A stretch of 64,000 nt of DNA from IMGVR_UViG_3300025121_000282:62001-126000; one strand, 5' to 3'. Counted from the stretch's first letter, positions 24,582-48,809 are shown. Numbers and translations: made by a program. Notes: generated by a model from the letters alone, not told the origin.

Positions 24582-24646
24582 CTTTATTCTCCTTCTTTAG
24601 AAGGGAAATGTAAGCGTCAGCCACATCGCTCTTTTCACAAATTAAG

Positions 24647-24968
24647 TGCCCGGTGAGGGAGTCGGACCCTCACGCTCTTGCGAGCGGCGGATTTTCTTCG
24701 CTCTACGAATTTCTTCGCTCTCCATTTTACTGGAGATTTGTGCGCTGGACTTTGTCTTCACCCGTTCTGGGTGGTCGCCGTTAAGTCTCTACACCTTCCT
24801 CCTTGTCAGGGAGGCTTGGCTCGGCGTTGTCTCGCTTCTTTTGAAGGAAGCAGGGAGTTCACCGAATTTGACGACATTCACTCTAGCCATTCCTGGCTAG
24901 GTGCTCAAATTGGATGTAGTCTCCATCCTACTTAAGTCCGCTGCGTCTACCGGTTTCGCCAACCGGGC
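24647..24968 (-). tRNA. trnL: tRNA-Leu(UAA), interrupted by group I intron
   Basis: Exons 24934-24968 and 24647-24695 join into a class II cloverleaf, anticodon loop CU-UAA-AA; no encoded CCA. Confidence 0.93.
24696..24933 (-). ncRNA. group I intron (IC3-like), 238 nt, in tRNA-Leu(UAA) after U34
   Basis: P/Q/R/S-like blocks AAATTCGGTGAA, CCGAGCCAAG, GAAGGTGTAGAGACT, AAAGTCCA; 5' exon ends in U, intron ends in G. Confidence 0.93.
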
Positions 24969-30168: not shown

Positions 30169-31590
30169 TTGAAAGCAAGAAGCACTATTCCCGAATCTTC
30201 AACTAATCCTGGCAAACTCCAGGCACTCAGTAATCTGTATCAGGAATATTTGAAGTACATGGAAGTTTGTGTGGGGTTGATGATTAAAGACAAGGTATTT
30301 AGTCTAAAGCCCTCAGAAAGAATGTTGTACTTTCCAAATTCCAGCACATTGACTGTGAATATAAAAGCCAGTTGTCAAATGCAGTCAATACAACTGGTTA
30401 ACAGTTGGGTAGCTGGTGTTTATGTTAGAATTTTAAGGAAGTATATCGGAAAGCAAAAATTTATTGATTCAGAAGCTAAACAACTTTATACGATCGGAAA
30501 ATATCGTCTTACTCATGGTGGTAAATTTGGAAATGCTGAGGTTTCCCAAAAATTAGTTGACCTTTATTGGTCTTGGGTTTGGAATCCCGAAATTGTGGGC
30601 AATCCTCCAAGAATCACTTACAAAATCCCAATGAGGATGACAGAGCACACGGTTGTTGTTGAACCACCAAAAAACACCGTTCATTTTAATGGTTTGTGGT
30701 TAAAGTTTTCTTCCCTGGTTTCAAAACAGCGGATTTCAATTCCCCTCAAAGTCACACCACACCTCCATCGGTTTGTTGGTTTGGCAAACATTGCTCTTAC
30801 AGTTTATGTCAGAAAGACGCGCATTGGGTGGCAGTTTCTCTTTACTGACAAATCTGAGGAACCCACTTTTGATGGTTCAGTGGGTAAGGTTGGAATAGAC
30901 GTTGGTTTAAATACTTTAGCTGCTACCAGCAGTGGAGAACTACATGGGTATAAATTTAAAAAGAAATTTGAGTATTTAAAAAAGAGGGTACAAGACGCAA
31001 GAGCAAATCGCCAAAGACAGGGTTTAAAGGATGACTCTTTAAAACTTTGGAAACTAGAACAACGCTTAAGTGGTCAGATCAAAACGGCTGTTGGTTCCAT
31101 TGCTAATAAACTTGTCAAGAAATATAAAGACCACACATTTGTCGTTGAAGATCTTGACCTCTCAGGATGTAAGGGTTCAAAGCGTTTTGCCTACAAAGCT
31201 CTTCAAAGCTCTTTAGCCCGAAAGGCTGTGATCGAGAAAATAAATCCGGCCTACACTTCTCAACAATGTCCAAGTTGCGGGTGCATTGATAAAAATAACA
31301 GAAACGGGATAAAATTTTCTTGTAAATCATGTGGTCGAAAAGCTCATGCCGATTTTGTTGGCGGGTTCAATATTCTCAGACGTTCTGAGAATAAAAATAT
31401 TGGGCTGAAAACGTCACCAAAAGAAGCAAAGGTAATTTTGAGAGAGCGATACCTTAGAAATAGGAACAGTTCCTCAAAACTCCCTGGTCGTAAGACCAAA
31501 ATAAAGCGCGCTTGTACGGACAAGCCAGAGACTCACTACGGAGAAATGCCGCAAAGTCTCAAATCAGGCTCAACTGAAAAGTTAACCTGA
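30169..31590 (+). mobile_element. tnpB: TnpB (IS200/IS605/IS607-family RNA-guided nuclease), no transposase in window
   Basis: RuvC-I GIDVG, RuvC-II VEDL, NPAYTSQQCPSCG...CKSCG, RuvC-III HAD; antisense to neighbours. Confidence 0.88.
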
Positions 31591-31630: not shown

Positions 31631-32113
31631 TCAAACTGCCCCAAGAGACCTGATACGATTTCTAATTTCTGTTAGAATTTCGCCTAACCAGTTGGTTCCT
31701 CGCCATGTACTGCGACTATGGGCTCTAGAGTCAGATGCTTTTAAACCGATACCCCACAAACAATCGGTCGCACTGGCTTCTACTATTGTTTTGTTGCCTG
31801 TAGCCAGCAGTTCTGTTTTGAGGTCTTCGTTCTGTGTGTACTTGGCCCAAGAGCCTTTCCACACAATTTGTTTGGCCTTGGCTTTCCAAACACTATCGTT
31901 AAAGCCCCTCACAGCCTTTCCGAGGCGTTGGTGCTCAGCGGGGTCACTTGTACCCATTATTCTTTCCTCAATACCCATGTCGCCAAACAGACGGGCTTTC
32001 TCGGCCATCATGTACTGCTCAGCACAACAGTAGGCTACACCACCAATCACAAATGGACTTGGCGCCCACTGACTGAAATTGCTGCCCCAAAAGAAATGGA
32101 ATTCCTCTGACAT
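31631..32113 (-). CDS. NADAR family protein (YbiA/DUF1768)
   Basis: FSQW, AEQYMMAEKARLFGD, IVEAS...WGIG and WRGTNWLG motifs. Confidence 0.92.
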   Translation of the reverse strand: MSEEFHFFWGSNFSQWAPSPFVIGGVAYCCAEQYMMAEKARLFGDMGIEERIMGTSDPAEHQRLGKAVRGFNDSVWKAKAKQIVWKGSWAKYTQNEDLKTELLATGNKTIVEASATDCLWGIGLKASDSRAHSRSTWRGTNWLGEILTEIRNRIRSLGAV

Positions 32114-32362
32114 TTTGAGTACCCTGCAGTTGTTACCTTAAGATTTGTAATTCGTAACTCTGGTAGACCCATGTGTTGTGCTAAATGTGGGTATGTAGCC
32201 CATGTCCAAGTCTGCCACATCTGTGCTGTTAGTTCATTCCCAAAAGATGCCTTGATCAGTAAGATCAACGACCCGTCCAACTTGATTGTGTTGTGTTCAA
32301 ATCACCATTGGGAACTCGACCATGGATTGTTGCGACTAGAAGACTGCACTGGCGGTCTCTGA
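32111..32362 (+). pseudogene. 5'-truncated HNH endonuclease (paralog of 39537-40062)
   Basis: CAKCGY...HVQVCH...INDPSNLIVLCSNHHWELD; frame closed by TGA at 32108-32110; 3' end overlaps a tRNA. Confidence 0.7.
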
Positions 32363-32426
32363 GGGATTCGAACCCCCGTAGGCCCTTTAGGGGAGGGCTG
32401 CCTGATCCTGGCTAGGCTAAGAGACC
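32350..32426 (-). tRNA. atypical tRNA, probably Arg(CCU)-derived, 6-nt anticodon loop
   Basis: Acceptor GGUCUCU/AGAGACC, G73+CCA, D-loop GGA (A20), stem GCCCU/AGGGC closing CCCUAA. Confidence 0.7.
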
Positions 32427-32464
32427 ATGCTACACAAGTGTTGTCTTGTTACTTTACACTGTCA

Positions 32465-32893
32465 TCACCCGGGAACCATGAAGAACTTCCGCTTGTGGTT
32501 TTTCCAGCGGAACCGGAAATCGGTCGTCACACCGAACCGCTGACGGATGTACCAGCCGATGGCACCCTCGGTACCGCTTTTGGTCACCCAAGGCTGATTG
32601 ACGACAATCGTGGGAACGTTGGGGTCATCCCCATCCTCGATGGGGAAGGGCATGCAGAAGTCCCAATTGTAATCAGGAAGTTTGGGTTCTTCATAGCCAT
32701 AATACTCAGCATTAGACCCAAAAATCTCACGGTCACGGTCCACACTAGTCATCGAAATCAGCGTGGGGGCCAGACGGATGATTTTACGCCGAAGCTTAAA
32801 CATCACCCAGGTATCAGACCAGAGCACACCATAACTAGGGTCATACTGGAGACCCTCATGGTTGGACAGCAGGACAGATTTCTTGCTAGACAT
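32465..32893 (-). CDS. hypothetical protein
   Basis: 142 aa ORF. Confidence 0.55.
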   Translation of the reverse strand: MSSKKSVLLSNHEGLQYDPSYGVLWSDTWVMFKLRRKIIRLAPTLISMTSVDRDREIFGSNAEYYGYEEPKLPDYNWDFCMPFPIEDGDDPNVPTIVVNQPWVTKSGTEGAIGWYIRQRFGVTTDFRFRWKNHKRKFFMVPG

Positions 32894-32986
32894 TTAACAG
32901 ATCCTTTTTGTGGTTAAAGTACTAACAAGATAGCCTCCTCTCTAAGAATTGACTGTGTCAAAAATTGGTCTAATTACAAACATTGC

Positions 32987-33063
32987 TGGCTGGGGTACGA
33001 GGATTTGAACCTCGGTCCTCCGCTTCAAAGGCGGGTATCCTGGGCCAGCTAGATGATACCCCA
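32987..33063 (-). tRNA. trnQ: tRNA-Gln(UUG)
   Basis: U1-A72 acceptor, loop CU-UUG-AA, G73, encoded CCA. Confidence 0.92.
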
Positions 33064-33229
33064 CTATCTCAAAGGTTGCCTGGGTCTCACTACTGCTCGA
33101 AGTTCACCTTGTGAGGCTAAAATCGGTCACAGCCAAGTCTGGTGGCCAGCCCAAGCACAACATCAACACGTTGCCTAGCACGTTGTTTAAAGCCCCATAC
33201 AGCCCGATTGCTGTATGGCTCGCTCCTTA

Positions 33230-33427
33230 CTAGGTCGGGAGCTTAGAGTCGGGTTCCACAGGCTCACCGGTGACGGGATTCACTTCAGTGACCGTATCAG
33301 AATTCTTACCCACCATTTCAATGATAGCCGGGCTATCGGTGGCCATCCACCCTGTACAGCGTCGGTTCTGTTCGTCCCTGTACTTTATTCGCCACGGTCT
33401 GTTGGGCTTAATTTCTTGCGAGTCCAT
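33230..33427 (-). CDS. hypothetical protein
   Basis: 65 aa ORF. Confidence 0.45.
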   Translation of the reverse strand: MDSQEIKPNRPWRIKYRDEQNRRCTGWMATDSPAIIEMVGKNSDTVTEVNPVTGEPVEPDSKLPT

Positions 33428-33478
33428 GGGTTGTCACATCCTCAGTTGGTACTATTATTACACAGAGAGTTTGGCAGG

Positions 33479-34027
33479 TCAATCTGCCGCTGTTTGAATT
33501 TCTTTTATACTGACGTTTCCTACAAACAACCGCTCAATACCAACGTGTTTTACAGCCGTCACCGTTATGTGCAGTCCTTCTGGATGCAACACCTCATTAA
33601 CTCGGTCCAACAATTCCTCATTGGCTAGCTTGAGTGGTGCTGCATCCATTGGGTAGTCTCTAATAGTCAGAGCGTGCATAAACCAAAAGGGCAAAGCCCC
33701 GAAATCCTCTGGTTGAAGTCCGTCTGCAGACCAGTACTGCTTAGCATAAGCAAATAATTTACAGTCATGTAATTGACTTTGACTGCCAACTTCGTTGTAA
33801 ACATTAGCAACAACATAACTATCTACATGTTTTGGCTTTCCATAGAATACCACACTCTCAATCTTGTCCCCTGGGAAAATTGCATGACTATCGTGTAAAA
33901 CAAAGAAATGCTTGCTATAAAGTAATTTTGAGATAGCCTCACGTTGTGACAGGGTGGCAACCTCTGGACCATGGATGACTAATTCTGATGTTTTAGGGTG
34001 TATACCGATCCAGGCAAACGGCTCCAT
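33479..34027 (-). CDS. hypothetical protein
   Basis: 182 aa ORF. Confidence 0.6.
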   Translation of the reverse strand: MEPFAWIGIHPKTSELVIHGPEVATLSQREAISKLLYSKHFFVLHDSHAIFPGDKIESVVFYGKPKHVDSYVVANVYNEVGSQSQLHDCKLFAYAKQYWSADGLQPEDFGALPFWFMHALTIRDYPMDAAPLKLANEELLDRVNEVLHPEGLHITVTAVKHVGIERLFVGNVSIKEIQTAAD

Positions 34028-34030
34028 TAC

Positions 34031-34621
34031 CTACTCCACCACAATGTAGTCTTCGAGACTTGTAATCTCTTCTTTGGTTACAGCATCCGTGAAGAAACCA
34101 TCCAGGCCATGTGCCCAGGGCTTATTGGTCTCAGGGTCTATAATGGCCGCCCTGTCAATCCACATGGACGCCCCCGTACCACTCTCTATGGTAGGTAGGG
34201 CCCCACGAGCTTTGCCCATTCTGAAAGAACTCTCAGTGAAAGTGGCACCCCAGCCTATGGCTTTAAATGGTTTCACAATTCTCAGCGACAGTTGATGGGG
34301 ACTACGCTCGTGGTCGTGTCCGCACGAGTAGCAGTGCTCTAGGGGTGGAAGGTCTTTTAGGTCTGCTGTGCTGAACAACACTCTCAACTTAGCCAAAAAT
34401 CTGAGTGCCTCTGGGTCGGTGATGGACTCCAGAATAGTCTTTGCTACTGGATAGTTATGGCCAAATATAACATTTCGGTCAATAAATTCCGCACCCCGCA
34501 AAGCAATTGCTGGTAGCAGAACGTCCTGCCACTCCTCAAATGAGGATTCCTCGTACGGTATGTTTTGGAATAGGCGCCTTAGGCCCAGAATTTCTTTCTC
34601 ACTTAGTACAAGCATCTTCAA
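34031..34621 (-). CDS. hypothetical protein
   Basis: 196 aa ORF. Confidence 0.6.
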   Translation of the reverse strand: MKMLVLSEKEILGLRRLFQNIPYEESSFEEWQDVLLPAIALRGAEFIDRNVIFGHNYPVAKTILESITDPEALRFLAKLRVLFSTADLKDLPPLEHCYSCGHDHERSPHQLSLRIVKPFKAIGWGATFTESSFRMGKARGALPTIESGTGASMWIDRAAIIDPETNKPWAHGLDGFFTDAVTKEEITSLEDYIVVE

Positions 34622-34971
34622 TTACCTGTAGGTCCGAGAATGTTGCCACCGAAATCAAGATCAACCTTGGGGCCAAACAACTTGATTCTGCTCTCTTCAG
34701 CGGAGATCAGTTTTTGCGCTTCATGCACGTCAGTAATGCCCAGTTGTTGCCAGGGAGCCGACCACTCCCGGCTCTCCATGTTTTCTACAGTGTCAGGGGT
34801 GACGTAGACCCACACATGGGTTTTGAGGTTGATCCATCCGACGTAGTTGTAGCTGTCTAAACTGCCAATCGAATTGTTTGTGATGGGTTTGCCTACACGG
34901 CCTGAATACGGGCCAGCCGTTTTGGCCGCTTCGATCATACTAAATACAGATTTTGCTTCTAGTTTAAACAT
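34618..34971 (-). CDS. hypothetical protein
   Basis: 117 aa ORF. Confidence 0.55.
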   Translation of the reverse strand: MFKLEAKSVFSMIEAAKTAGPYSGRVGKPITNNSIGSLDSYNYVGWINLKTHVWVYVTPDTVENMESREWSAPWQQLGITDVHEAQKLISAEESRIKLFGPKVDLDFGGNILGPTGN

Positions 34972-34996
34972 GGGCCTTATACCTTAGTTATGAAAA

Positions 34997-35183
34997 TTGT
35001 TGCAGGCAGGGTTGGGCTTATTCAGGGGTACCCGGTTAAAGGCAGAGCCGAGAAGTTTGCTTGACCTACTACGCCCAGGGGCCGTGTGCTTGTCACCCTG
35101 GCGTCAATGTTCCAGAACCAACTCACAGCAAGCACATGTGACACGGCGCTAGTGCTGACCCACAAATTGGTCCTCTGCAACAA
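34997..35183 (-). ncRNA. candidate structured RNA (~185 nt rod)
   Basis: Terminal ttgttgcag/ctgcaacaa stem, nested internal complementarities, ORF-free gap. Confidence 0.35.
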
Positions 35184-35187
35184 AATC

Positions 35188-35415
35188 TTATTCTGCTATG
35201 TACTCGTCCGTGTTTATATTTGGACACTCCGTAAGGTGCCTGTTCAGCGAACGGGTGCCTGATTCAGTAGGACGGTAAGAGCCATTCTCTCTATTTTTAC
35301 GAACCCACCCCGCATTACATAGTTGTGTAGCCAAGGCATGGTTGACTCTGTAAGAATAAACGGGTGCGTTGTGAATAATAAACCAGAGTTCGCCATACAT
35401 ATTTGTTCTTAACAT
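35188..35415 (-). CDS. small winged-helix-like protein (paralog of 37171-37455)
   Basis: QLCNAGWVRKNRENGSYRPTESG. Confidence 0.55.
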   Translation of the reverse strand: MLRTNMYGELWFIIHNAPVYSYRVNHALATQLCNAGWVRKNRENGSYRPTESGTRSLNRHLTECPNINTDEYIAE

Positions 35416-35421
35416 ATAGAG

Positions 35422-35763
35422 TTACTCCTTGGCAGAAACAAAATTGACCATCACATTGTTGTTCTGAATGCCAAACACAATGCCCTCCATAAACTTGTTG
35501 TAATCGGTATTGTGGAGCATCATAAACGTACCTATGTTAGTGTGTACCAGAATCCCATCGGTCTTGTCTCTAACAGCGCCCAAGAAATCGGCGACAACAG
35601 TCTGCTTCCGACTGTCAGGTCCCTTACTCATTGTCTCAAATTGAATTAGCACTTTGACTACTGCCTCGTTATTGGGTGTGGTACATGGGCTGTAACTACC
35701 GTAGCAGTCAGCGGCGCTACTCCACTCTGACGACGGGTCACTCTGGCACCCATCGTCAGACAA
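35422..35763 (-). CDS. hypothetical protein
   Basis: 113 aa ORF. Confidence 0.5.
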   Translation of the reverse strand: MSDDGCQSDPSSEWSSAADCYGSYSPCTTPNNEAVVKVLIQFETMSKGPDSRKQTVVADFLGAVRDKTDGILVHTNIGTFMMLHNTDYNKFMEGIVFGIQNNNVMVNFVSAKE

Positions 35764-35854
35764 TCCGTGTTACGGTACCCACACCATAATCCGTGTCGTA
35801 TTACTGCGGGTCAACTACTGCGGAAGGTCTGAAGCCTGATTAACCACAATGCCG

Positions 35855-36346
35855 TCAGGCAGAGGAAAAGTAGTCACTGTAATCTTTTTCCTCAAAGTAC
35901 TGAGGTTCTGCCTTTTTGGTCAGAGGATTCAACATGAGAACCCAGGTGGCGTCAGCGGACGCAGGGCTGAACAACCCATTGGGGTCAGCCTGAGGCAGAA
36001 TGGCATACCCCTGGTTTAAGTTTTCTGCCGCAATCTTCTCAGGGTTCGTGAACTGGGTTGCAGCAGGGATACCAAATCCCAAAGACTTGCCAACCAGGAT
36101 GAACTTGCCGAGCATGGGACTGAAAACATAGGTATATGTAGTCAGCCCTTCCTGGTCCCGGAGTTCAAAAAGGGTCTTGACGATTTTCCGCTCACGGAAA
36201 TTTTTGATCCCAGGCATACCCACCTGGGATGTGCCTTCGGAGAGGATCTTTTCTTGCTGCTGTCTCTGACGGACGTCACTTGAAACCTCTTCACGAGGAC
36301 AACCAACAAGAGAAAGGCCTGCAGACAAAATCAGAAAACGCTTCAT
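35855..36346 (-). CDS. phage lipoprotein; possible frameshift near the C-terminus
   Basis: Lipobox LSLVGC; an alternate frame after the A5 run reads KITVTTFPLP. Confidence 0.65.
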   Translation of the reverse strand: MKRFLILSAGLSLVGCPREEVSSDVRQRQQQEKILSEGTSQVGMPGIKNFRERKIVKTLFELRDQEGLTTYTYVFSPMLGKFILVGKSLGFGIPAATQFTNPEKIAAENLNQGYAILPQADPNGLFSPASADATWVLMLNPLTKKAEPQYFEEKDYSDYFSSA

Positions 36347-36360
36347 GGGCTACTATTCCC

Positions 36361-36663
36361 TTAGTTACGAAGATTGAGGACAAAAGAGGCTAGATCGGGG
36401 GGCATGGCATCATGGGGAACAGTGTCCGCACGACGAATCATTTCTGAACGGAGAAGAGCCTTGTGGTCAGGGTCGGCAGAAGACGCATATGACATCTGCA
36501 TGTTCCTGATTTCTGATATAACCCCGTCCTGGAAAGCTTGAGAGTTCTTGAACACCTCTCTCCGGGTGTCTTCTTCTGCAGCCCCGAAGAGCTTAAAGGA
36601 CACCAGACCCAGGCCTCTTGCCCCAAAGGCAAGGAGGGCCAGTACGAGTAACGCAACTACCAC
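36361..36663 (-). CDS. membrane-anchored protein upstream of the lipoprotein
   Basis: N-terminal TM; RREVFKNSQAFQDG. Confidence 0.6.
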   Translation of the reverse strand: MVVALLVLALLAFGARGLGLVSFKLFGAAEEDTRREVFKNSQAFQDGVISEIRNMQMSYASSADPDHKALLRSEMIRRADTVPHDAMPPDLASFVLNLRN

Positions 36664-36715
36664 AACTATGAGCCAGTTGTAGGCCTCTTTGCGGTCTTCT
36701 CGTCACTGCTCAGTA

Positions 36716-37156
36716 TTAGACATTTTGCAGTTCGCTTTCTACAGTTTTAACCGACCACTTTTGCACACGTATTGTAATCCCAAATGGTGATTGGGTGATT
36801 TCACTTTTTGCGTTTATGTGTAATTCTTTCAGCGACTTGTTGATGGCATGAACAAGTACTTCGAATGGCCCAAGCCTTATGTTTTCCAGTTGAAGTTTAC
36901 TAATAAATGTAGTAGTCTCTTCCACTTCCTTTACAGGGAATTCGTGAAACTTGACCCCTCCAATAATTACAGCACCATCCACCTGAGTTGCAGAATTCCA
37001 GCTTGTAATCCTGGTTTCTACCTCTGGAATACTTTCCAGTCGTAGACGTATTTTGACATTGCTGATGCCAAGTGCATTCCACGGTGGGAACAACGTGAGT
37101 GTGGTCCCTGCCAGCGTGCCGACACTCTCATTACCTATGTATACTTCTGCATTCAT
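36716..37156 (-). CDS. hypothetical protein
   Basis: 146 aa ORF. Confidence 0.55.
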   Translation of the reverse strand: MNAEVYIGNESVGTLAGTTLTLFPPWNALGISNVKIRLRLESIPEVETRITSWNSATQVDGAVIIGGVKFHEFPVKEVEETTTFISKLQLENIRLGPFEVLVHAINKSLKELHINAKSEITQSPFGITIRVQKWSVKTVESELQNV

Positions 37157-37170
37157 TGCAGTACTCCCAA

Positions 37171-37455
37171 TTAGTCTATGTGTTTTGGCAATGACGGAAT
37201 TATATCTGACAATCTGAATATAGTAGGGTCAGACAAGTGTAGGTTTGCCCGATTCCAGTCTTCCAATTCATTTAGCTTGCGTATGCCTAACTCAGTAGGA
37301 CGATAAGAGCCGCTAATTCTGTTTTTGTGGACCAGTCCTGCCAAGCACAGTTGGTGGGCCACACCCTGGTAATACAACCCCCACACAGGAGCAGTATGGA
37401 CAATATGACGAAGTACCTGATGGTAGTACCTATAGTGTTTTATTTCGCGTTTCAA
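37171..37455 (-). CDS. small winged-helix-like protein (paralog of 35188-35415)
   Basis: QLCLAGLVHKNRISGSYRPTELG. Confidence 0.55.
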   Translation of the reverse strand: MKREIKHYRYYHQVLRHIVHTAPVWGLYYQGVAHQLCLAGLVHKNRISGSYRPTELGIRKLNELEDWNRANLHLSDPTIFRLSDIIPSLPKHID

Positions 37456-37662
37456 TTAGATGCCCCCAAATAGTAGCATTGGACTATGTGCTGGGCACCT
37501 GTCCGCATTTACCAAGTCTCCGAATATGTTATGCTCACAGAAGCATAGGGGTGTGCAACAGGTTGGATTGTGACATGGCTCAGGTTTGCCATCCTCTTTA
37601 ATTAAAAGAGGGAGACTACAAATTAGACATCTGGGCATGCTGCCTCGATTGTAATAAGCCAT
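37456..37662 (-). CDS. small Cys-rich protein
   Basis: CLIC, CHNPTCC and CFCEH motifs. Confidence 0.4.
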   Translation of the reverse strand: MAYYNRGSMPRCLICSLPLLIKEDGKPEPCHNPTCCTPLCFCEHNIFGDLVNADRCPAHSPMLLFGGI

Positions 37663-37686
37663 TGAAAGAAACCACCTGGAGAAAAA

Positions 37687-37769
37687 TGGAGCCGGGTGTG
37701 GGATTCGAACCCACGGTGTGGGATTCCGCCTTACAAGGGCGGTGCCGTCGACCGCTTGGCTAACCCGGC
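37687..37769 (-). tRNA. trnT: tRNA-Thr(UGU) with expanded variable region
   Basis: G1-C72/C2-G71, loop CU-UGU-AA, U73, CCA; 11-nt variable region. Confidence 0.85.
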
Positions 37770-37794
37770 AGAAACACAATTGTACATGGCAATT

Positions 37795-37965
37795 GGAAAT
37801 GCTGATTTTGAAGGCCCCAGGACTTCCACCTGGACACCACTTTTGATCGTGGCTGCTAGCGCAGACTCTAGAATCTGCGGCCAGTGTTGGGCACCGCTTA
37901 ATGACCACTTGGCGGGGCACAGAGCACCGGTCTTACAATAGGCCTTCAAAATCAGCACTTCTCCA
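37795..37965 (-). ncRNA. candidate multibranch ncRNA (~170 nt)
   Basis: 16-bp perfect stem 37801-37816/37941-37956 enclosing several hairpins. Confidence 0.5.
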
Positions 37966-37998
37966 GTGCCCAGGCGTTACAAAGTGTCCGTACTTTCC

Positions 37999-38519
37999 GG
38001 ACTGTCACCCCTTCCTCAAGCAAGCTGCCTTGTAGGTGCATACTTGAGAATTTGGTCAGGCCCAGAGTTGGAACCTGTGACTCAAACAGCTAGCTAGGCC
38101 GTTAAAGTCAAGTACCCAATGGCGAAGCACATGCCATCAGGAGGGTGTGGAACCTGCTGTGCTAACAGGGCAGAGAACCGGGTCTGCGGACCGGTTCACA
38201 ATAGCCACTCATTTGAGCCTTAGGCTTTCGCCACGTAGTCCTGCCGGAAAGTCTCATGGGAAATGGCATCCCACTTTTCATCGTAGGTTGAAGTCCACGG
38301 CTTTGTCTTCCGATGCACCTTTTAGTGCTGAGGGCGGGTGACTCCCTTTCGGTCGTAAAAACCGAATCTTGCCAACACCAACATGGTTATTGCAACCCGC
38401 CCGAACACCCCATGCGGGGCTCAAATGCAGGGTGCTCTGCTATCAACCACTAAGCAGATTCCTGTGAGCGGAGTAGGCCTTTTAGTTGCCTAGTCCCGGC
38501 TTTTATACGGGACAGTCCC
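37999..38519 (-). ncRNA. candidate large structured ncRNA (~520 nt)
   Basis: Terminal gggactgtc/gacagtccc pairing, about ten short internal hairpins, no credible ORF. Confidence 0.5.
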
Positions 38520-38527
38520 TAGGGGAA

Positions 38528-38992
38528 CTAAACCTTTGCAGTTCTGGCGCGCTTGAAACCTAGCAGGCTGATTTGATTGATCCTGGCCTTGTAAAGCACG
38601 CCACCACTCTCGCCACGAGCTTCCAGGAAAGCAATACCGGTGGCGACACTTTCAATCAGGGCATCCAATTCTATGTTCGATAAATGATCAGCCCGGTCAA
38701 ACCTTTCCCAGGCTTTTTTGACGCTTTGATTGCTGATCATCTGCTTGGGGTTGGACACCTCAGCACGAATCAAATCATTGGTTTCCATAGTTCTTGTGTC
38801 ATTGCAATGTGAGAAGGCGTCTATTCGCTCCCTCAAGATCTCGCTGTACGCAGTCATATGGGTTATTTGGAGTACAATCCGCGCCCGTTCGTGTTCCTTG
38901 AGTTTGGAGAATATTTCATCGTTGATGAGAAAGGACAACTTGGCGATCCTTTTGTCTAGTTGTTCCTTCTCGTCCAAAATCTTCTCTATCAT
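38528..38992 (-). CDS. crAss001_48-like N-terminal domain fused to a repeated phage domain
   Basis: EKEQLDKRIAKL...QITHMTAYSEILRERI; C-terminal half similar to 40361-40582. Confidence 0.6.
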   Translation of the reverse strand: MIEKILDEKEQLDKRIAKLSFLINDEIFSKLKEHERARIVLQITHMTAYSEILRERIDAFSHCNDTRTMETNDLIRAEVSNPKQMISNQSVKKAWERFDRADHLSNIELDALIESVATGIAFLEARGESGGVLYKARINQISLLGFKRARTAKV

Positions 38993-39037
38993 CTGGGACT
39001 CCGTGGATATAAAAACCTAGACCTCAGGGGGCTGTAT

Positions 39038-39295
39038 TCAGACCTTCTCCATAGGCTCTACACCCCATCTACACTCCCCGTTCCCACTTTTTGATCTCAG
39101 TGAGAGTGTGGAAACCAACACCGGCTTGTCTTTCAGTGCGGCCAACTTGACTGCATGCTGAAAGCGAGCCATGAAGGGGGTGCTGTCATCCACCAGTTCC
39201 ACCTCAAACCCTGCGGCCTTTAAAGCCTCATTGATAATCAGGGCTATGGTGGTTTTACCCTCACCGGCCTCGCCTGAAATCTGTACCTTAAGCAT
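39038..39295 (-). CDS. small P-loop-containing protein
   Basis: ISGEAGEGKTT. Confidence 0.55.
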   Translation of the reverse strand: MLKVQISGEAGEGKTTIALIINEALKAAGFEVELVDDSTPFMARFQHAVKLAALKDKPVLVSTLSLRSKSGNGECRWGVEPMEKV

Positions 39296-39536
39296 CTGGA
39301 ACTCTTTCGAAAAACGATGGTTAGTGGGCTGAACTAGGAGACATCAACAGCCCCGTAGGAAGCACTCCTCAGTTTTAAAAAGGCGCGTTACGACAAGTTG
39401 GCACTCCAAGATGCGTACGCATTTGAAAACTAACCTGTCTTCCCTTTTGAAAAAGCACACCAGGAGGGACTCGAATAGAGTGGTAATCTTTTTACAGTTC
39501 ACTCTATTCAACCCCTATCAGCTTGTGGACCTGGAA

Positions 39537-40062
39537 ATGAAACTCACTAATTGTACTAACTGTGGTGACTCCACCACAAATCCAAGATTTTGTTCTAACT
39601 CGTGTTCGGCATCATGGGGCAACAAACTAAAGCCCCCATGTCCCAATGAAGAAGAAATGTAAACGTTGTGAAGTTATTATTCCCAGCAGAATAACTTATT
39701 GCACCAAATGTCAAGACCACTTTAAATCAAATACTAAGCGATGGAAAAACGAAACACTGGGTACACTACAGGCACGCCGAGTGTATCAGTCCAACTCACA
39801 AATTCGAGATGATGCTCGTGTGGTAGTGGACAAGCAGGGGTGGGTCAAATGCTGTGCGGTGTGTGAGTACTCTTTACACGTGCAAGTGTGTCACGTTAAA
39901 GCCATCAAAGACCACACGCCAGACACTATTATCTCGGCGATAAATGACCCATCCAACCTGATTTTGTTGTGTTCCAACCACCACTGGGAATTTGACCATG
40001 GCCTCTTGGACATTAAAGAAATTCGTGCTAGGCAGGGATCGAACCTGCGACCACTCGCTTAG
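39537..40062 (+). pseudogene. HNH endonuclease with N-terminal Zn finger, frameshifted at a C5 run (~39633)
   Basis: MKLTNCTNCG...FCSNSCS in one frame, then KKKCKRC...HVQVCH...NLILLCSNHHWEFD; 3' end overlaps tRNA-Arg. Confidence 0.75.
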
Positions 40063-40311
40063 CTTACCACTATAACTTTCGTTACTCTCTTGTGGAGATT
40101 TGTGGCCTGGACTTTGTCTTCACCCGTTCTGGGTGGCCCCCGTCAAGTCTCTACACCTTTTCCCGTTTAATAGGGAACTTGGCTCGGCGTTGTCTCGCTT
40201 CTTTTGAAGGAAGCAGGGAGTTCACCGAATTTGAGGGCATTCACACTAGACATTCCTATCTAGGTGCTCCTATTTCAAAGGCGAGCGCTCTATCCGCTGA
40301 GCTACTAGCAC
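40024..40311 (-). tRNA. trnR: tRNA-Arg(UCU), interrupted by group I intron
   Basis: Exons 40278-40311 and 40024-40062 give loop CU-UCU-AA; A20, G73; no CCA. Confidence 0.9.
40063..40277 (-). ncRNA. group I intron (IC3-like), 215 nt, in tRNA-Arg(UCU) after U34
   Basis: Same P/Q/R/S blocks as the Leu intron; terminal G; covarying P3. Confidence 0.9.
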
Positions 40312-40360
40312 ACAAAATCAATTTGAAAATAGTTACTAGGGAACAAAAGAAAGTTGAGTG

Positions 40361-40582
40361 TTACTCAAGTGGGTTTGGACGGATGGGTCCATCAGGGTCA
40401 TCATTAGTCCATCTAATTCTAGTCCTAAGGGCCTTTAGGTCTAATAAGGTCCTTTGGTCGGATTCGGCCTTATACAAAACACCACCCGTCTCACCCCGCG
40501 CTGATAGGAAAGTAACACCAGAATTGATACTGTCGATCAACTGATTGAGTTCAATGTCAGACAGGTCACCCCCCATGGTCAT
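40361..40582 (-). CDS. hypothetical protein (paralog of the 38528-38992 C-terminal domain)
   Basis: LSDIELNQLIDSINSGVTFLSARGETGGVLYKA. Confidence 0.6.
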   Translation of the reverse strand: MTMGGDLSDIELNQLIDSINSGVTFLSARGETGGVLYKAESDQRTLLDLKALRTRIRWTNDDPDGPIRPNPLE

Positions 40583-40772
40583 ACCTCAGCCATAACTGGT
40601 CTAATTCTGGTGTGGTTTCCATTCTCTGCTCCAAGAATTGAAAAATGGGCTACAAGTGAGTTGACGGTGATGTGACTATCGACCATCGAGCCGCGGCCTT
40701 ACCACAAGTAGGCCACACCGTGGGGACCGGGAGGCTTATACCTGCTTGTAACCCAAACTTTGATGAAAATTG

Positions 40773-40853: not shown

Positions 40854-41507
40854 CTATGTTTGAAGAATCTTGTCCCAACGCTCTGCTGCGTCTGGGGAAA
40901 TGGTTATTGCGTTCTTATACAAAGATGTTTCTTGCCAAGACCAAATATAACATGTGTCTGTGTACAAATCGTATGCAATAATAAAATCGAATTCATGGGA
41001 TTGGTATCTTTTACCCGGTTGTATCAGCTTGGTTTTGGCTAGAACTCTTGGGGCATGGATCAATCTAATAGCTGGCTGACCATGTCCCTTGTCTGACCTA
41101 GCAGTTTTAACTTGTACTTTCCATAGCTTATTAGTTTGGGGTAGGAACATTATTATGTCCACAGTGGCACAATCAAACACTGACTTGTATGTCTCAATAC
41201 CTCTAGCCAAAGCCCGCGCCATAACTGCACACTCTGACAAGCTTCCAATGTCACGACTAGTTAATTTAGCTCGGTCGATCGATTGGTGGAGCCAAGATTC
41301 CGTCCCACGTTCTTTTTTATTGCTGATTGTATGTGGGATGTGTTTGCTTTTTATCTCAGTTTCAGTGAGTGGGTGGTCTCTCAATAGTGCACTAAGTGCT
41401 CCCTTGGAAACCCCAGTCAGGCCCCTAATCTCATTAAGGGACCTACGTTCATCAGTCCTAAGACGCAGGCACTCGGCTCTAAGACTCTCATCTAAACGTG
41501 TAGCCAT
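40854..41507 (-). CDS. free-standing PD-(D/E)XK endonuclease (I-Ssp6803I/PDDEXK_5-like) with N-terminal HTH
   Basis: GSLSECAVMARAL...VDII...KVQVKT; N-terminal RSLNEIRGLTGVSKGALSALL. Confidence 0.75.
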   Translation of the reverse strand: MATRLDESLRAECLRLRTDERRSLNEIRGLTGVSKGALSALLRDHPLTETEIKSKHIPHTISNKKERGTESWLHQSIDRAKLTSRDIGSLSECAVMARALARGIETYKSVFDCATVDIIMFLPQTNKLWKVQVKTARSDKGHGQPAIRLIHAPRVLAKTKLIQPGKRYQSHEFDFIIAYDLYTDTCYIWSWQETSLYKNAITISPDAAERWDKILQT

Positions 41508-41563: not shown

Positions 41564-41669
41564 TTAAGTATCCCTATTGGGTTGTCAAAGACACCATTTT
41601 GCGTTTGAGCTTAATAAGACCGCTAGTGAGGCCCTTGAAAATCAGTGTGTAAGAGTGTAGGAACAGTCG

Positions 41670-41972
41670 TGCGCCCACCTGGACTTGAACCAGGAACCGT
41701 GGCGTTATGCAATCCACTTCGGCTTTCGCCGCTCTTCCGTTGCTGAAAGATTTGTGGTCTGGACTATCCCTTAACCGTGTTCCTTTATCGGAATTTAGGT
41801 TCTCCGTGTCTAGTCTCTACACCTTCCCTTTGCTTAAAGGGCTTGGCTCGGGATTGGCATCAGCATAACCTGTTAAGCGTTCCCCGAATTTACGGAGTTG
41901 TCACGCAAAAGTTTCCTTTTGCGCAGCCCTTAAACTCAAGCACCCCGCTCTGACCATTTGAGCTATGGGCGC
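41670..41972 (-). tRNA. tRNA(CAU), elongator Met or Ile2, interrupted by group I intron
   Basis: Exons 41939-41972 and 41670-41709; loop CU-CAU-AA; G1-C72 paired; no initiator GGG/CCC. Confidence 0.88.
41710..41938 (-). ncRNA. group I intron (IC3-like), 229 nt, after U33 of tRNA(CAU)
   Basis: AAATTCGGGGAA, CCCGAGCCAAG, GAAGGTGTAGAGACT, GATAGTCCA; P3 CTCCGT/ACGGAG; terminal G. Confidence 0.9.
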
Positions 41973-42207
41973 AAAAGTCCCTACACTCTTACACACCTGA
42001 TTTTTCACAGATCCCAATCAATTATTTAGGGAGTGGCACCACCCCGGTGTCAGGATTTCAGCAATGTTAGAACCGGGTCATTATAGCTGAACCTGTAGTG
42101 CGGGCCAGTTATAACCCTGTCACCTGCGTCAGTCCGAGGGGGTCAGGAACTCCTGGAGCAGCATTTCGCCCGGATTGACAAGAATTCGGTTCTTCGGGAG
42201 CATCGTT

Positions 42208-48151: not shown

Positions 48152-48460
48152 TTACTCCTTATTTAGAAATTTCCCCAAGAACACATACAATTTTTCAGCT
48201 TCTTTTTTACCTAGAATGGTGCAGTCCCAATGACCGTACCTCGATTGATGACCAAACACGTATTTGGTGGCCATCACAACCCGTTTATACCACGGATTGC
48301 ACGGGTTCAGTTGTACACTTGTGTAACAGCACTCTTCGGGCTCCCCCTCTTCGGGCTCGAACTGCACAAACTGCAAAATGTGTTCTGTGCTGCTGCACTC
48401 ACACACCACATGTAAAGTTGTGATGAAATCTTGTGGAGACATTTTAGTGGACAATCCCAA
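48152..48460 (-). CDS. hypothetical protein
   Basis: 102 aa ORF, CECSSTEH. Confidence 0.55.
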   Translation of the reverse strand: MGLSTKMSPQDFITTLHVVCECSSTEHILQFVQFEPEEGEPEECCYTSVQLNPCNPWYKRVVMATKYVFGHQSRYGHWDCTILGKKEAEKLYVFLGKFLNKE

Positions 48461-48809
48461 TTCAGTCTGGTGGGTTTATGTGATTCAAAGTCTGGTAGAA
48501 CGGAGAGGGAAACGCGGTAATCCCCTCCCCGGCTTCTATTATGTTGGGTCAACCACTGATCCTACAAGAAGAATACGTCAGCATAACGGCCTCAAGAAGG
48601 GAGGCGGGAAGTATACCTTCAAGGCCCGTCCTTGGGTTCCCCGCGCCCTCTACGGTCCGTATTGCAACAGGAGTGAGGCCCTAAGGGCAGAGATGGCTCT
48701 CAAGCACAACAAAAGGGGTGTGGAAAGAATCAAGTGGTCCATTAATGACCACCATTTGTGCAGAGGCTTGGGACCCGATGACCCCTGGGTCACTTCTTCA
48801 AAACCCTGA
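48423..48809 (+). CDS. GIY-YIG nuclease (SLX1-like)
   Basis: WVYVIQ...YYVGSTTDPTRRIRQHNG...GGGKYT...EALRAE; start uncertain. Confidence 0.85.
   Translation: MKSCGDILVDNPNSVWWVYVIQSLVERRGKRGNPLPGFYYVGSTTDPTRRIRQHNGLKKGGGKYTFKARPWVPRALYGPYCNRSEALRAEMALKHNKRGVERIKWSINDHHLCRGLGPDDPWVTSSKP

What the first reader, a model, noticed from the sequence alone, without database searches (positions are those of the whole stretch)
32111..40311. Two paralogous HNH genes each converge on and overlap the 3' end of an Arg-type tRNA
The HNH genes at 32111-32362 (truncated) and 39537-40062 (frameshifted) share HVQVCH...INDPSNL.LCSNHHWE.D. Both are antisense to the tRNA cluster, and both have stop codons inside a tRNA 3' arm (the Arg(CCU)-like and Arg(UCU) genes). 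Inference: a tRNA-Arg-targeting family of free-standing homing endonucleases that decays once its allele is fixed.
Basis: partly seen in the sequence, partly recalled or inferred. Interest (0 to 1): 0.6.

Follow-up and report, generated by a model that had tools for sequence, protein, structure and literature searches.

The report
Decayed homing-endonuclease cassettes carrying tRNA-Arg genes
Two broken copies of a phage "selfish" DNA-cutting gene each sit tail-to-tail against an arginine tRNA gene; comparison with relatives suggests the nuclease travels with its own tRNA-Arg copy and lands inside the resident tRNA-Arg gene, an interesting variant of a known kind of mobile element.

Summary
The window is part of a 315-kb groundwater jumbo phage. 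It carries exactly two HNH_2 (PF13391) paralogs. One is a 3' fragment (32111-32362). The other is split by a frameshift (39537-39662 and 39646-40062). Both are antisense to the tRNA cluster and both end inside a tRNA-Arg gene: Arg(CCU), and Arg(UCU), which carries a 215-nt group I intron.

In public viral contigs, 40 of 53 relative clusters lie within 150 nt of a tRNA. Arg is over-represented (11 of 40, against 9% of local tRNAs), and 10 of those 11 converge on the tRNA 3' end. tRNA(CAU) is an even commoner partner, so the family is not Arg-specific.

The overlapped tRNA looks like cargo, not the target. HNH-free close relatives show that [tRNA-Arg allele + HNH] replaced the resident tRNA-Arg. 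The resident gene's T-loop-to-3'-end stub remains about 60 nt upstream of the HNH start (window 39455-39475). The same junction, just 5' of T54, recurs in other lineages.

Best reading: decayed free-standing homing-endonuclease cassettes that bring a replacement tRNA. No cleavage has been tested. This is a new variant of a known kind (compare T4/T6 SegB). Interest is moderate.

The parts
32111..32362 (+). HNH1: 3' fragment of an HNH_2 endonuclease gene. The ATG-started ORF is 32171-32362 (63 aa) and holds only the catalytic core. The N-terminal zinc-knuckle and linker region is missing.
   Evidence: Pfam PF13391, 34.8 bits. Alignment with full-length homologs. Frame translation shows homology back to the upstream stop codon.
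32350..32426 (-). tRNA-Arg(CCU) with encoded CCA. All four stems are well formed. The anticodon loop reads CCCCUAA, so C stands at position 33, which is unusual. Its last 13 nt are overlapped by the HNH1 stop region.
   Evidence: ARAGORN. Rfam RF00005, 49.9 bits. Sequence read directly.
39455..39475 (-). Stub of the displaced resident tRNA-Arg(UCU): T-loop, 3' T-stem strand, 3' acceptor strand and discriminator. It lies about 60 nt upstream of the HNH2 N-terminal ATG.
   Evidence: 28 of 30 identity to the 3' end of the intact tRNA-Arg(UCU) of the HNH-free relatives L185 and L186. The flank beyond it is 98-100% identical.
39537..39662 (+). HNH2 N-terminal piece: the first zinc knuckle (C..C...NPRFCS.SC), now in a different frame from the rest of the gene.
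   Evidence: Alignment to P0003 and P0006. PHROG HNH hit. Frame translations.
39646..40062 (+). HNH2 main ORF (138 aa): second zinc ribbon plus a complete HNH_2 domain. The last 13 codons are antisense to tRNA-Arg(UCU) exon 2.
   Evidence: Pfam PF13391, 39.4 bits. The H, N and HH catalytic columns are conserved.
40024..40062 (-). tRNA-Arg(UCU) exon 2, from C35 to the discriminator.
   Evidence: Direct reading. ARAGORN -i calls a split tRNA at 40023-40312.
40063..40277 (-). Group I intron (215 nt, no ORF) between U34 and C35. U stands at -1 and the last base is G.
   Evidence: Rfam RF00028, 35 bits, E=8e-6, below the gathering score of 50. 88% identical to the intron copy in tRNA-Leu(UAA).
40278..40311 (-). 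tRNA-Arg(UCU) exon 1, G1 to U34.
   Evidence: Direct reading: 7 of 7 acceptor pairs and 5 of 5 anticodon-stem pairs form with exon 2.
40854..41507 (-). Context: free-standing PD-(D/E)XK endonuclease gene (PDDEXK_5), immediately downstream of the intron-bearing tRNA(CAU).
   Evidence: Pfam PF11645, 37 bits. A profile of its homologs hits PDB 2ost_A at E=1.1e-9.
41669..41972 (-). Context: tRNA(CAU) split after U33 by a 229-nt group I intron (41938-41710).
   Evidence: Rfam RF00028, 40.9 bits. ARAGORN -i. Direct reading.
24646..24968 (-). Context: tRNA-Leu(UAA) with a group I intron at the classical U34/A35 site. This is the near-copy of the Arg(UCU) intron.
   Evidence: ARAGORN -i. Rfam RF00028, 45.1 bits. 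Alignment.

Best explanation
Both genes are decaying copies of a free-standing HNH_2 homing-endonuclease cassette. The cassette consists of a complete tRNA-Arg gene and, converging on it tail-to-tail, the endonuclease gene.

Proposed mechanism:
1. The enzyme recognises a resident tRNA-Arg gene in an endonuclease-free genome and breaks it near the 5' edge of the T-loop (position 53/54).
2. Repair from the donor replaces positions 1-53 of the resident tRNA, and some upstream DNA, with the donor's own tRNA-Arg allele plus the endonuclease gene. That allele is presumably not cut.
3. The resident T-loop-to-3'-end piece is left as a dead stub upstream of the endonuclease start.
4. The endonuclease's catalytic core ends within about 30 nt of its own tRNA's 3' end, so the reading frame simply runs on, antisense, into that tRNA until it meets a stop.
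5. Because the insertion brings a working tRNA-Arg, it costs the phage little.
6. Once every genome in the population carries the cassette, nothing maintains the nuclease, and it decays by frameshift (HNH2) or truncation (HNH1).

Shown: family membership, the tRNA association, the geometry, presence/absence among relatives, the linked tRNA allele, and the stubs.
Inferred: the cleavage site, immunity of the carried allele, and the repair route.
For: Family and paralogy:
- HNH_2 domains with intact catalytic columns; only two copies in the genome.
- The family is large: 964 50%-identity clusters at E<=1e-30.

tRNA association in viral contigs:
- 40 of 53 clusters have a tRNA within 150 nt.
- Arg accounts for 11 of 40 against a 9.4% background (p=8.6e-4). 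Ten of the 11 are convergent.
- The tRNA labels cluster on the protein tree (0 of 500 shuffles as low).
- The HNH core motif ends from 2 nt inside to 29 nt short of the tRNA 3' end. The C-terminal tails are just antisense T-arm and acceptor sequence, read in different frames.

The cassette moves as a unit:
- L029 shares only the roughly 540-bp HNH + tRNA-Arg(UCU) module with L024, L025 and L032. The flanks are unrelated even by tblastx.

Presence/absence in the L024 lineage:
- 60 of 80 loci have tRNA-Arg(UCU) at the site.
- The HNH_2-bearing loci (L105, L181) carry a different tRNA-Arg allele that replaces the native one. The boundaries are flush with the tRNA.
- That allele also occurs without the HNH_2 gene (L124, L151), which suggests later loss of the nuclease.

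The window's own lineage:
- L185 and L186 have an intact, intron-free tRNA-Arg(UCU) and no HNH.
- The window keeps a 28 of 30 identical stub of that tRNA's 3' end at 39455-39475. The flank beyond is 98-100% identical, while the other side is only about 70% identical.

Recurrent junction:
- An antisense TTCGA stub lies within 110 nt upstream of the first Cys codon in 7 of 10 Arg-convergent genes, against 17% of 541 control ORFs (p=3e-4).
- In L105 the stub matches the native allele's T-loop, not the carried allele's.

Fixation: the broken state is identical in 24 contigs and in 12 runs from 4 studies.

Precedent: the GIY-YIG enzyme SegB sits in phage tRNA arrays and cuts tRNA genes at a T-loop motif (PMC13096335).
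Against: - No enzyme of this family was assayed, so target, cut site and immunity are all inferred from scars.
- The family tree is poorly resolved, and neither window copy falls in a supported Arg clade.
- The enrichment tests treat 80%-identity clusters as independent, which they are not fully.
- Stubs are too short for ARAGORN or Infernal to call. L072, L075 and L022 did not score with the simple motif test.
- The carried tRNAs in the window have canonical T-loops, so the basis of any immunity is not obvious.
- The 138-aa HNH2 ORF is as long as some natural short family members (133-140 aa), so it may not be dead.
- How the first cassette formed is unexplained.
- No stub can be checked for HNH1, because its 5' side is gone.
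Confidence: 0.62

Rival explanations
1. The cassette is kept because it benefits the phage. The nuclease drives exchange or amplification of tRNA-Arg alleles, for example alleles resistant to host tRNA-cleaving defences, as SegB does for tRNA-Tyr. It would then be a domesticated tool rather than a purely selfish element. This overlaps with the best explanation in mechanism and differs in what maintains the cassette.
For: - Every cassette brings its own, often very different, tRNA-Arg allele.
- SegB-driven tRNA amplification defeats the Septu defence (PMC13096335).
- A paper listed (PMC10264068) reports in its title and abstract that phage tRNAs evade host nucleases through anticodon-loop changes. 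The window's Arg(CCU) has an odd C33.
Against: - Both window copies are broken, and that state is fixed.
- Most relatives at the same site lack any nuclease (53 of 60).
- The linked allele persists without the nuclease (L124, L151).
- No tandem amplification is seen in the window.
Confidence: 0.18
2. Collaborative homing with the intron. HNH2 would target the intron-less anticodon loop of tRNA-Arg(UCU), and the ORF-less group I intron would protect the carrier, as in phage PhiI or in S-PM2 with F-CphI.
For: - HNH2 lies beside an ORF-less group I intron in its partner tRNA.
- An analogous pairing is next door: a PD-(D/E)XK nuclease beside the intron-bearing tRNA(CAU).
Against: - The Arg-associated relatives examined converge on tRNA-Arg genes that ARAGORN calls without an intron.
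- HNH1's partner has no intron.
- The insertion scars lie at the T-loop, not the anticodon loop.
- The intron is 88% identical to the tRNA-Leu copy in the same genome, so it looks like a separate, later arrival.
Confidence: 0.06
3. Non-homing insertion. The module entered tRNA genes by recombination at the near-universal T-loop sequence, through microhomology or a recombinase, as integrative elements do when they duplicate a tRNA 3' end. The HNH would be a passenger.
For: - A duplicated tRNA 3' end flanking the insert is the classical signature of tRNA-targeting integrative elements.
- The same site hosts four other HNH kinds.
Against: - No integrase or recombinase lies in the 0.5-1.2-kb modules.
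- The only constant protein is the nuclease.
- Stubs accompany HNH_2 cassettes but not the other HNH kinds at the same site.
Confidence: 0.08
4. Chance. HNH genes are common in phages and merely accumulate in dispensable, tRNA-rich regions. The overlaps would be a by-product of genome compaction.
For: - Phage tRNA arrays are known hotspots for several nuclease families.
- Several tRNA types are neighbours of this family.
Against: - Isotype enrichment.
- A fixed convergent geometry, with the core ending within about 30 nt of the tRNA end.
- Linked alleles and positioned stubs.
Confidence: 0.04

Closest known systems
SegB of phages T4/T6 (free-standing GIY-YIG homing endonuclease in the tRNA gene cluster)
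   Same: It is a free-standing nuclease gene embedded in a phage tRNA array. It cuts inside tRNA genes at a T-loop-like motif and promotes inheritance or amplification of the neighbouring tRNA genes. Its homologs are widely associated with tRNAs (PMC13096335).
   Different: It has a different catalytic fold (GIY-YIG, not HNH_2). It is reported to have no isotype preference, whereas here Arg and CAU tRNAs dominate. No convergent overlap with a carried tRNA, and no resident-tRNA stub, has been described for it.
HNH endonucleases of the phage T5 tRNA region (F-TflI, F-TflII, F-TflIV)
   Same: From my own recollection, not verified here: these are HNH-type site-specific nucleases encoded between tRNA genes of a phage.
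   Different: I did not test sequence relatedness, target, or architecture. I know of no reported cassette-with-tRNA structure.
Classical free-standing phage homing endonucleases with a linked resistant target allele (T4 mobE/nrdB, SegF, SegG)
   Same: The nuclease gene sits next to a variant of its target gene. It spreads by double-strand-break repair with co-conversion of flanking markers, and is present or absent among relatives (PMC2790892 and PMC2988022, listed).
   Different: Here the linked allele is a whole small RNA gene that overlaps the nuclease ORF, and the invaded allele is left behind as a truncated stub.
tRNA-targeting integrative elements (attP carrying a tRNA 3' end)
   Same: Insertion into a tRNA gene is made harmless by bringing a replacement for the displaced part. 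A duplicated tRNA 3' segment flanks the insert.
   Different: There is no integrase. The insert is 0.5-1.2 kb and sits in a phage genome. The whole tRNA is replaced, not just its 3' end.
I-Ssp6803I, the PD-(D/E)XK homing endonuclease of the Synechocystis tRNA-fMet intron (for the neighbouring gene 40854-41507)
   Same: A profile of the window protein's family matches PDB 2ost_A at E=1.1e-9. That 2OST is I-Ssp6803I is my recollection. The window's tRNA(CAU) intron sits after U33, the classical fMet.2Ug site (10.1101/2020.01.27.920355).
   Different: The window gene is outside the intron, free-standing, and has an extra N-terminal region of about 80 aa. The tRNA lacks the bacterial initiator features.

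Membership tests
Pfam HNH_2 (PF13391) endonucleases | Domain match above the curated cutoff | tested here: met
   HNH2 scores 39.4 bits and HNH1 34.8 bits against a cutoff of 21.
Pfam HNH_2 (PF13391) endonucleases | Catalytic His, Asn and His-His columns of the beta-beta-alpha-metal motif | tested here: met
   H83, N104, N111, H112 and H113 are invariant or nearly so across homologs, and are present in both window copies.
Free-standing homing endonuclease genes | Sporadic presence or absence at one site among closely related genomes | tested here: met
   L105 and L181 against 53 nuclease-free loci of the same lineage. The window against L185 and L186.
Free-standing homing endonuclease genes | Mobility independent of the flanks (same module in unrelated contexts) | tested here: met
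   L029 shares only the HNH + tRNA module with L024, L025 and L032.
Free-standing homing endonuclease genes | Site-specific cleavage of the nuclease-free allele and resistance of the carrier allele | not testable with these tools
   Only sequence differences between carried and resident tRNA alleles were seen.
Free-standing homing endonuclease genes | An intact, expressible ORF in this genome | tested here: not met
   HNH1 lacks its N-terminal two-thirds. HNH2 is split by a frameshift, although the 138-aa remainder keeps the catalytic domain.
   11 of 40 adjacent tRNAs are Arg, against 9.4% of local tRNAs.
   tRNA(CAU) is adjacent in 14 of 40 clusters. Ile, Glu, Thr and other tRNAs also occur.
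Group I introns (Rfam RF00028), for the insert in tRNA-Arg(UCU) | Covariance-model match at the gathering score | tested here: inconclusive
   35 bits (E=8e-6) against a gathering score of 50. The sister copies score 45.1 and 40.9 bits. Williams 2020 accepted tRNA introns from about 18-20 bits.
Group I introns (Rfam RF00028), for the insert in tRNA-Arg(UCU) | U at -1, terminal G, and removal restores a 7-nt anticodon loop and a full cloverleaf | tested here: met
   Read directly from exon 1 and exon 2, by reference. The joined-exon sequence was not sent to any search tool.
Group I introns (Rfam RF00028), for the insert in tRNA-Arg(UCU) | Self-splicing | not testable with these tools
   No RNA runs hold the locus.

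The most novel reading that the evidence does not exclude
A widespread class of 'self-complementing' homing cassettes in phages. An HNH_2 nuclease destroys the resident tRNA gene by inserting at the T-loop and, in the same event, delivers a replacement tRNA allele whose 3' end overlaps its own coding end. This would make such nucleases a main driver of tRNA allele turnover in phage genomes, possibly including turnover towards defence-resistant alleles. Together with three ORF-less group I introns and an I-Ssp6803I-like nuclease in the same array, it would make phage tRNA clusters a natural system in which several kinds of tRNA-targeting mobile elements interact.
Probability: 0.35. Interest if true: 0.72.

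Novelty: new variant of a known kind. Interest (0 to 1): 0.6.

Why it matters
Free-standing nucleases in phage tRNA arrays are known, but how they insert without harming the array, and why particular tRNAs are hit, is poorly described. If the model holds, it gives four things.

1. A concrete, testable target (the T arm of tRNA-Arg, junction at position 53/54) for a family with about a thousand 50%-identity clusters.
2. An explanation for antisense overlaps between nuclease ORFs and tRNA genes, which annotation pipelines tend to treat as errors.
3. A mechanism for wholesale replacement of phage tRNA alleles. This is relevant to the current work on tRNA-centred phage-host conflicts.
4. Natural before-and-after allele pairs on which to build assays.

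The same array also holds group I introns in three phage tRNA genes. A 2014 review stated that this setting was unknown for phages at that time (PMC3984707).

Tried and rejected
- Collaborative homing of HNH2 with the tRNA-Arg intron was my first idea (note 1). I dropped it because relatives converge on intron-less tRNA-Arg genes and the scars lie at the T-loop.
- I first read a 30-aa tblastn hit in L152 as a decayed HNH_2 remnant. ORF inspection showed a different, double-HNH gene there.
- Searching viral contigs with the neighbouring 154-aa protein (38528-38992) found no relatives.
- Only DNA runs kept as contigs hold the locus, from 4 studies. No RNA was found. No intron-less, HNH-intact or HNH-free variant appeared. 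Contigs break at the intron because it is repeated. This shows presence only, not absence of rare variants.
- A single-sequence AlphaFold2 model of the PD-(D/E)XK protein was unusable (pLDDT 43.5), so no fold search was run. A sequence profile against the PDB answered the question instead.
- phmmer of the single PD-(D/E)XK protein against the PDB found nothing.
- ARAGORN at relaxed thresholds and Infernal did not call the short tRNA stubs or the degenerate tRNA-like stretch under the stop codon of P0006 in L003. Those rest on direct alignment and reading.
- ARAGORN's intron-aware calls with very long introns enclosing an HNH gene (L016, L077, L091) were set aside as unreliable.
- The spliced (joined-exon) tRNAs were not sent to any search tool. 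Exons were examined by reference. One local script displayed loosely cut exon slices side by side in a MAFFT alignment, and nothing in this report rests on it.

Full report
**Setting.** The window is bases 62001-126000 of a 314,886-bp IMG/VR virus record rated complete. The same sequence occurs, almost base for base, in 24 groundwater and soil metagenome contigs and in 12 runs from 4 studies. The finding lies in a minus-strand block of small genes and tRNAs. ARAGORN finds six ordinary tRNAs in the window, all on the minus strand. With introns allowed it adds three split tRNAs. Each of the three coincides with a sub-gathering but significant match to the Rfam group I intron model.

**Checking the observation.** Only two HNH_2 genes exist in the genome, and they are paralogs.
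- HNH1 (32111-32362) is the last third of such a gene. It holds the catalytic core only and abuts the start of a NADAR gene.
- HNH2 has the family's full architecture: zinc knuckle, second zinc ribbon, then HNH. The first knuckle (39537-39662) is out of frame with the rest (39646-40062). The shift lies between 39631 and 39659.
- HNH1's stop codon lies 11-13 nt inside tRNA-Arg(CCU) (32350-32426).
- HNH2's partner is a tRNA-Arg(UCU) that ordinary tRNA finders miss because a 215-nt group I intron splits it between U34 and C35. Exon 1 is 40311-40278, the intron 40277-40063, exon 2 40062-40024.
- HNH2 covers the whole of exon 2, and its TAG stop is antisense to C35-U36-A37.

Two details need adding: one partner tRNA carries an intron, and that stop codon sits at the anticodon-loop end of the 3' exon.

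**Relatives and their neighbourhoods.**
- A word-indexed protein search gave only seven relatives. Five of the seven lie within 55 nt of a tRNA (Arg, Ile or CAU), and the tails of some were visibly antisense tRNA sequence.
- A profile search of 1.84 billion cluster representatives shows the family is large: 3968 hits, of which 964 are at E<=1e-30.
- In IMG/VR, 203 loci encode relatives, and I analysed the best 80. After collapsing to 53 clusters at 80% identity, 40 have a tRNA within 150 nt. The adjacent tRNA is tRNA(CAU) in 14 and tRNA-Arg in 11 (UCU 9, CCU 1, UCG 1).
- Arg makes up 9.4% of the 299 tRNAs in the same flanks (binomial p=8.6e-4).
- Ten of the 11 Arg cases are convergent on the tRNA 3' end. 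In those, the conserved end of the HNH core lies from 2 nt inside to 29 nt short of the tRNA 3' end.
- The variable C-terminal tails are simply the antisense of the T arm and acceptor stem, read in different frames in different genes.
- The tRNA labels cluster on the protein tree (Arg 9 changes against 12.7 in shuffles; CAU 8 against 14.3; 0 of 500 shuffles as low). The tree itself is weakly resolved.

**The module moves with its tRNA.** L029 shares with L024, L025 and L032 only a roughly 540-bp block that runs from the HNH start to the 5' end of tRNA-Arg(UCU). The 2.3-kb flanks on both sides are unrelated, even by tblastx.

I then sampled the L024 lineage using its neighbouring 234-aa gene, which gave 80 loci.
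- Sixty of the 80 carry tRNA-Arg(UCU) at the site, and 53 of those have no nuclease there.
- The two with the HNH_2 gene (L105, L181) carry a completely different tRNA-Arg allele with an unusual UGCAAAU T-loop. This is the same allele seen in L029.
- Against the nuclease-free L119, the difference is a clean swap of a 95-bp segment holding the native tRNA for a 628-bp segment holding the other allele plus the HNH gene.
- The foreign allele also occurs without the HNH_2 gene (L124, L151). This is what loss of a nuclease after invasion would leave behind.
- Four other HNH kinds, including an HNH_3, abut the same tRNA-Arg 3' end in other members of the lineage. The site is a hotspot.

**Before and after in the window's own lineage.** Homologs of the neighbouring PD-(D/E)XK gene led to short groundwater contigs, L185 and L186.
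- They have the same gene order: a tRNA(CAU)-like gene, PD-(D/E)XK, tRNA-Val, then tRNA-Arg(UCU).
- There, tRNA-Arg(UCU) is intact, has no intron, and no HNH follows it.
- Downstream, their sequence is 98-100% identical to window 39453-39330.
- Directly adjoining that flank, the window keeps a stub (39455-39475) that matches the T-loop, 3' T-stem strand, 3' acceptor strand and discriminator of the L185 tRNA-Arg at 28 of 30 positions. Nothing 5' of T54 is left.
- The stub lies about 60 nt upstream of HNH2's N-terminal ATG.
- On the other side of the cassette the two phages are only about 70% identical, so the cassette sits on a mosaic boundary.

The tRNA-Arg(UCU) that HNH2 overlaps has different acceptor and T stems from the resident type. 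It therefore came in with the nuclease. The gene that was hit is the stub.

**The same scar elsewhere.**
- In L105 and L181 a T-loop stub of the native allele, not of the carried one, lies 50 nt upstream of the HNH start.
- L021 keeps a whole T arm plus the 3' acceptor strand.
- L072 keeps an internally deleted tRNA.
- L023, L029, L005 and L003 keep T-loop-like stubs.
- Overall, an antisense TTCGA lies within 110 nt upstream of the first Cys codon in 7 of 10 Arg-convergent genes, against 17% of 541 control ORFs from the same tRNA-rich loci (p=3e-4).
- The other HNH kinds at the same site show no such stub.

**Mechanism proposed.** The nuclease breaks a resident tRNA-Arg gene at about position 53/54. 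Repair from a cassette-bearing genome copies in the donor's tRNA-Arg allele and the nuclease gene. The resident 3' piece remains as a stub and decays. The nuclease ORF runs into its own tRNA because its core ends at the tRNA boundary. After fixation the nuclease decays. What is shown and what is inferred is set out under the best explanation.

The closest documented analogue is SegB of T4/T6. It is a GIY-YIG enzyme in the tRNA cluster that cuts tRNA genes at a T-loop motif and is broadly tRNA-associated, without isotype preference (PMC13096335).

**What the intron adds.** The Arg(UCU) intron is 88% identical to the intron in tRNA-Leu(UAA) 15 kb away. Both sit after a CUU in the anticodon loop, so it probably spread within this genome. 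It is unrelated to the HNH scar at the T-loop, and relatives lack it. I therefore reject collaborative homing for HNH2.

The neighbouring pair is a better candidate for that arrangement. A tRNA(CAU) carries an intron after U33, which is the classical fMet.2Ug site. Just downstream lies a free-standing PD-(D/E)XK gene whose family profile matches PDB 2ost_A at E=1.1e-9.

**Limits.**
- There is no biochemistry and no RNA data.
- Stubs are too short for tRNA finders.
- The statistics are not fully corrected for relatedness.
- The tree does not place the window copies with support.
- HNH2's 138-aa remainder may still be active.
- HNH1's 5' side is deleted, so its scar cannot be examined.
- Joined-exon tRNA sequences were not sent to search tools. 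Exons were read by reference.

**Verdict.** This is a new variant of a known kind of element, of moderate interest, with unusually clear natural before-and-after alleles for testing.

Noticed in passing
window 24646-24968, 40024-40311, 41669-41972 (all minus strand): Three tRNA genes of one phage (Leu UAA, Arg UCU, CAU) each carry an ORF-less group I intron in the anticodon loop. The Leu and Arg copies are 88% identical, which suggests spread within the genome. A 2014 review said no phage tRNA intron was then known (PMC3984707). My later library searches turned up no report of one, which is not proof of novelty.
   Followed up: partly
L023 2995-3186; L005 1494-1807; L026 4481-4764: Further group I intron matches (64, 57 and 46 bits) lie in tRNA-rich stretches of other viral or metagenome contigs that carry this HNH family. 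Introns in viral tRNA arrays may therefore be recurrent.
   Followed up: no
window 40854-41507 (-); L185 1079-1741; L188 2501-3145: A free-standing PD-(D/E)XK (PDDEXK_5) nuclease gene, related to PDB 2OST, lies just downstream of the intron-bearing tRNA(CAU). Its homologs also sit inside tRNA arrays. In L185 the homolog follows an intron-less, low-scoring tRNA(CAU)-like gene.
   Followed up: partly
window 41645-41664 and 41977-41996: A 20-nt inverted repeat (95% complementary) brackets the tRNA(CAU)-plus-intron gene exactly. It could be a long processing stem or the ends of a small mobile unit.
   Followed up: no
window 32350-32426 (-): tRNA-Arg(CCU) has C instead of the near-universal U at position 33 (loop CCCCUAA). 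Its stems are otherwise perfect and it encodes CCA. It could be drifting towards a pseudogene or could be an altered-loop variant.
   Followed up: no
window 30169-31590, 32111-32362, 39537-40062, 48378-48809 (all plus strand): TnpB (IS605-type), both HNH genes and a GIY-YIG gene are the plus-strand genes that I could assign a family in an otherwise minus-strand block. The selfish nuclease genes all run against the local transcription direction.
   Followed up: partly
L105-L184 (lineage of L024), e.g. L127 2327-2824, L109 2436-2840, L152 2243-2821, L110 5419-5940: In one phage lineage of about 230 kb, at least four other HNH kinds (including HNH_3 and a double-HNH gene) occupy the same spot against the tRNA-Arg(UCU) 3' end. 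Another zinc-knuckle HNH lies between tRNA-Thr and tRNA-Gln. Each Arg-site occupant comes with its own tRNA-Arg allele.
   Followed up: partly
window 39330-39453 against 40633-40757, compared with L185/L186: The HNH2 cassette marks a sharp mosaic boundary. Identity to the relative is 98-100% on one side and about 70% on the other. This fits reports that nuclease genes sit at boundaries of genetic exchange between phages (PMC10448857, title only).
   Followed up: partly
window 40361-40582 (-) and 38528-38992 (-): A 73-aa ORF just upstream of tRNA-Arg(UCU) is 58% identical to the C-terminal part of the crAss001_48/Sequestin-like protein 1.4 kb away. It is absent from the relative L185, so it may have come in with the cassette.
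   Followed up: no
genome C1 284600-284674 (outside the window): A suppressor-type tRNA with anticodon CUA (ARAGORN labels it 'Pyl') is encoded elsewhere in the phage. Similar ones lie near family members in L011, L080 and L084. ORFs in the window read normally under code 11, so I did not assume recoding. HNH2 happens to end in TAG.
   Followed up: no
L003 about 3503-3585 (-): Under the stop region of the homolog P0006 lies a degenerate tRNA-like stretch. It has a pairing acceptor stem, a CCU anticodon arm and a T arm, but no proper D arm. No program calls it. An intact tRNA-Arg(UCG) follows about 10 nt beyond it, 55 nt past the HNH stop.
   Followed up: partly
L026 1-285; L057 3404-3771: A ROOL RNA and a tmRNA gene lie in viral contigs close to family members.
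   Followed up: no
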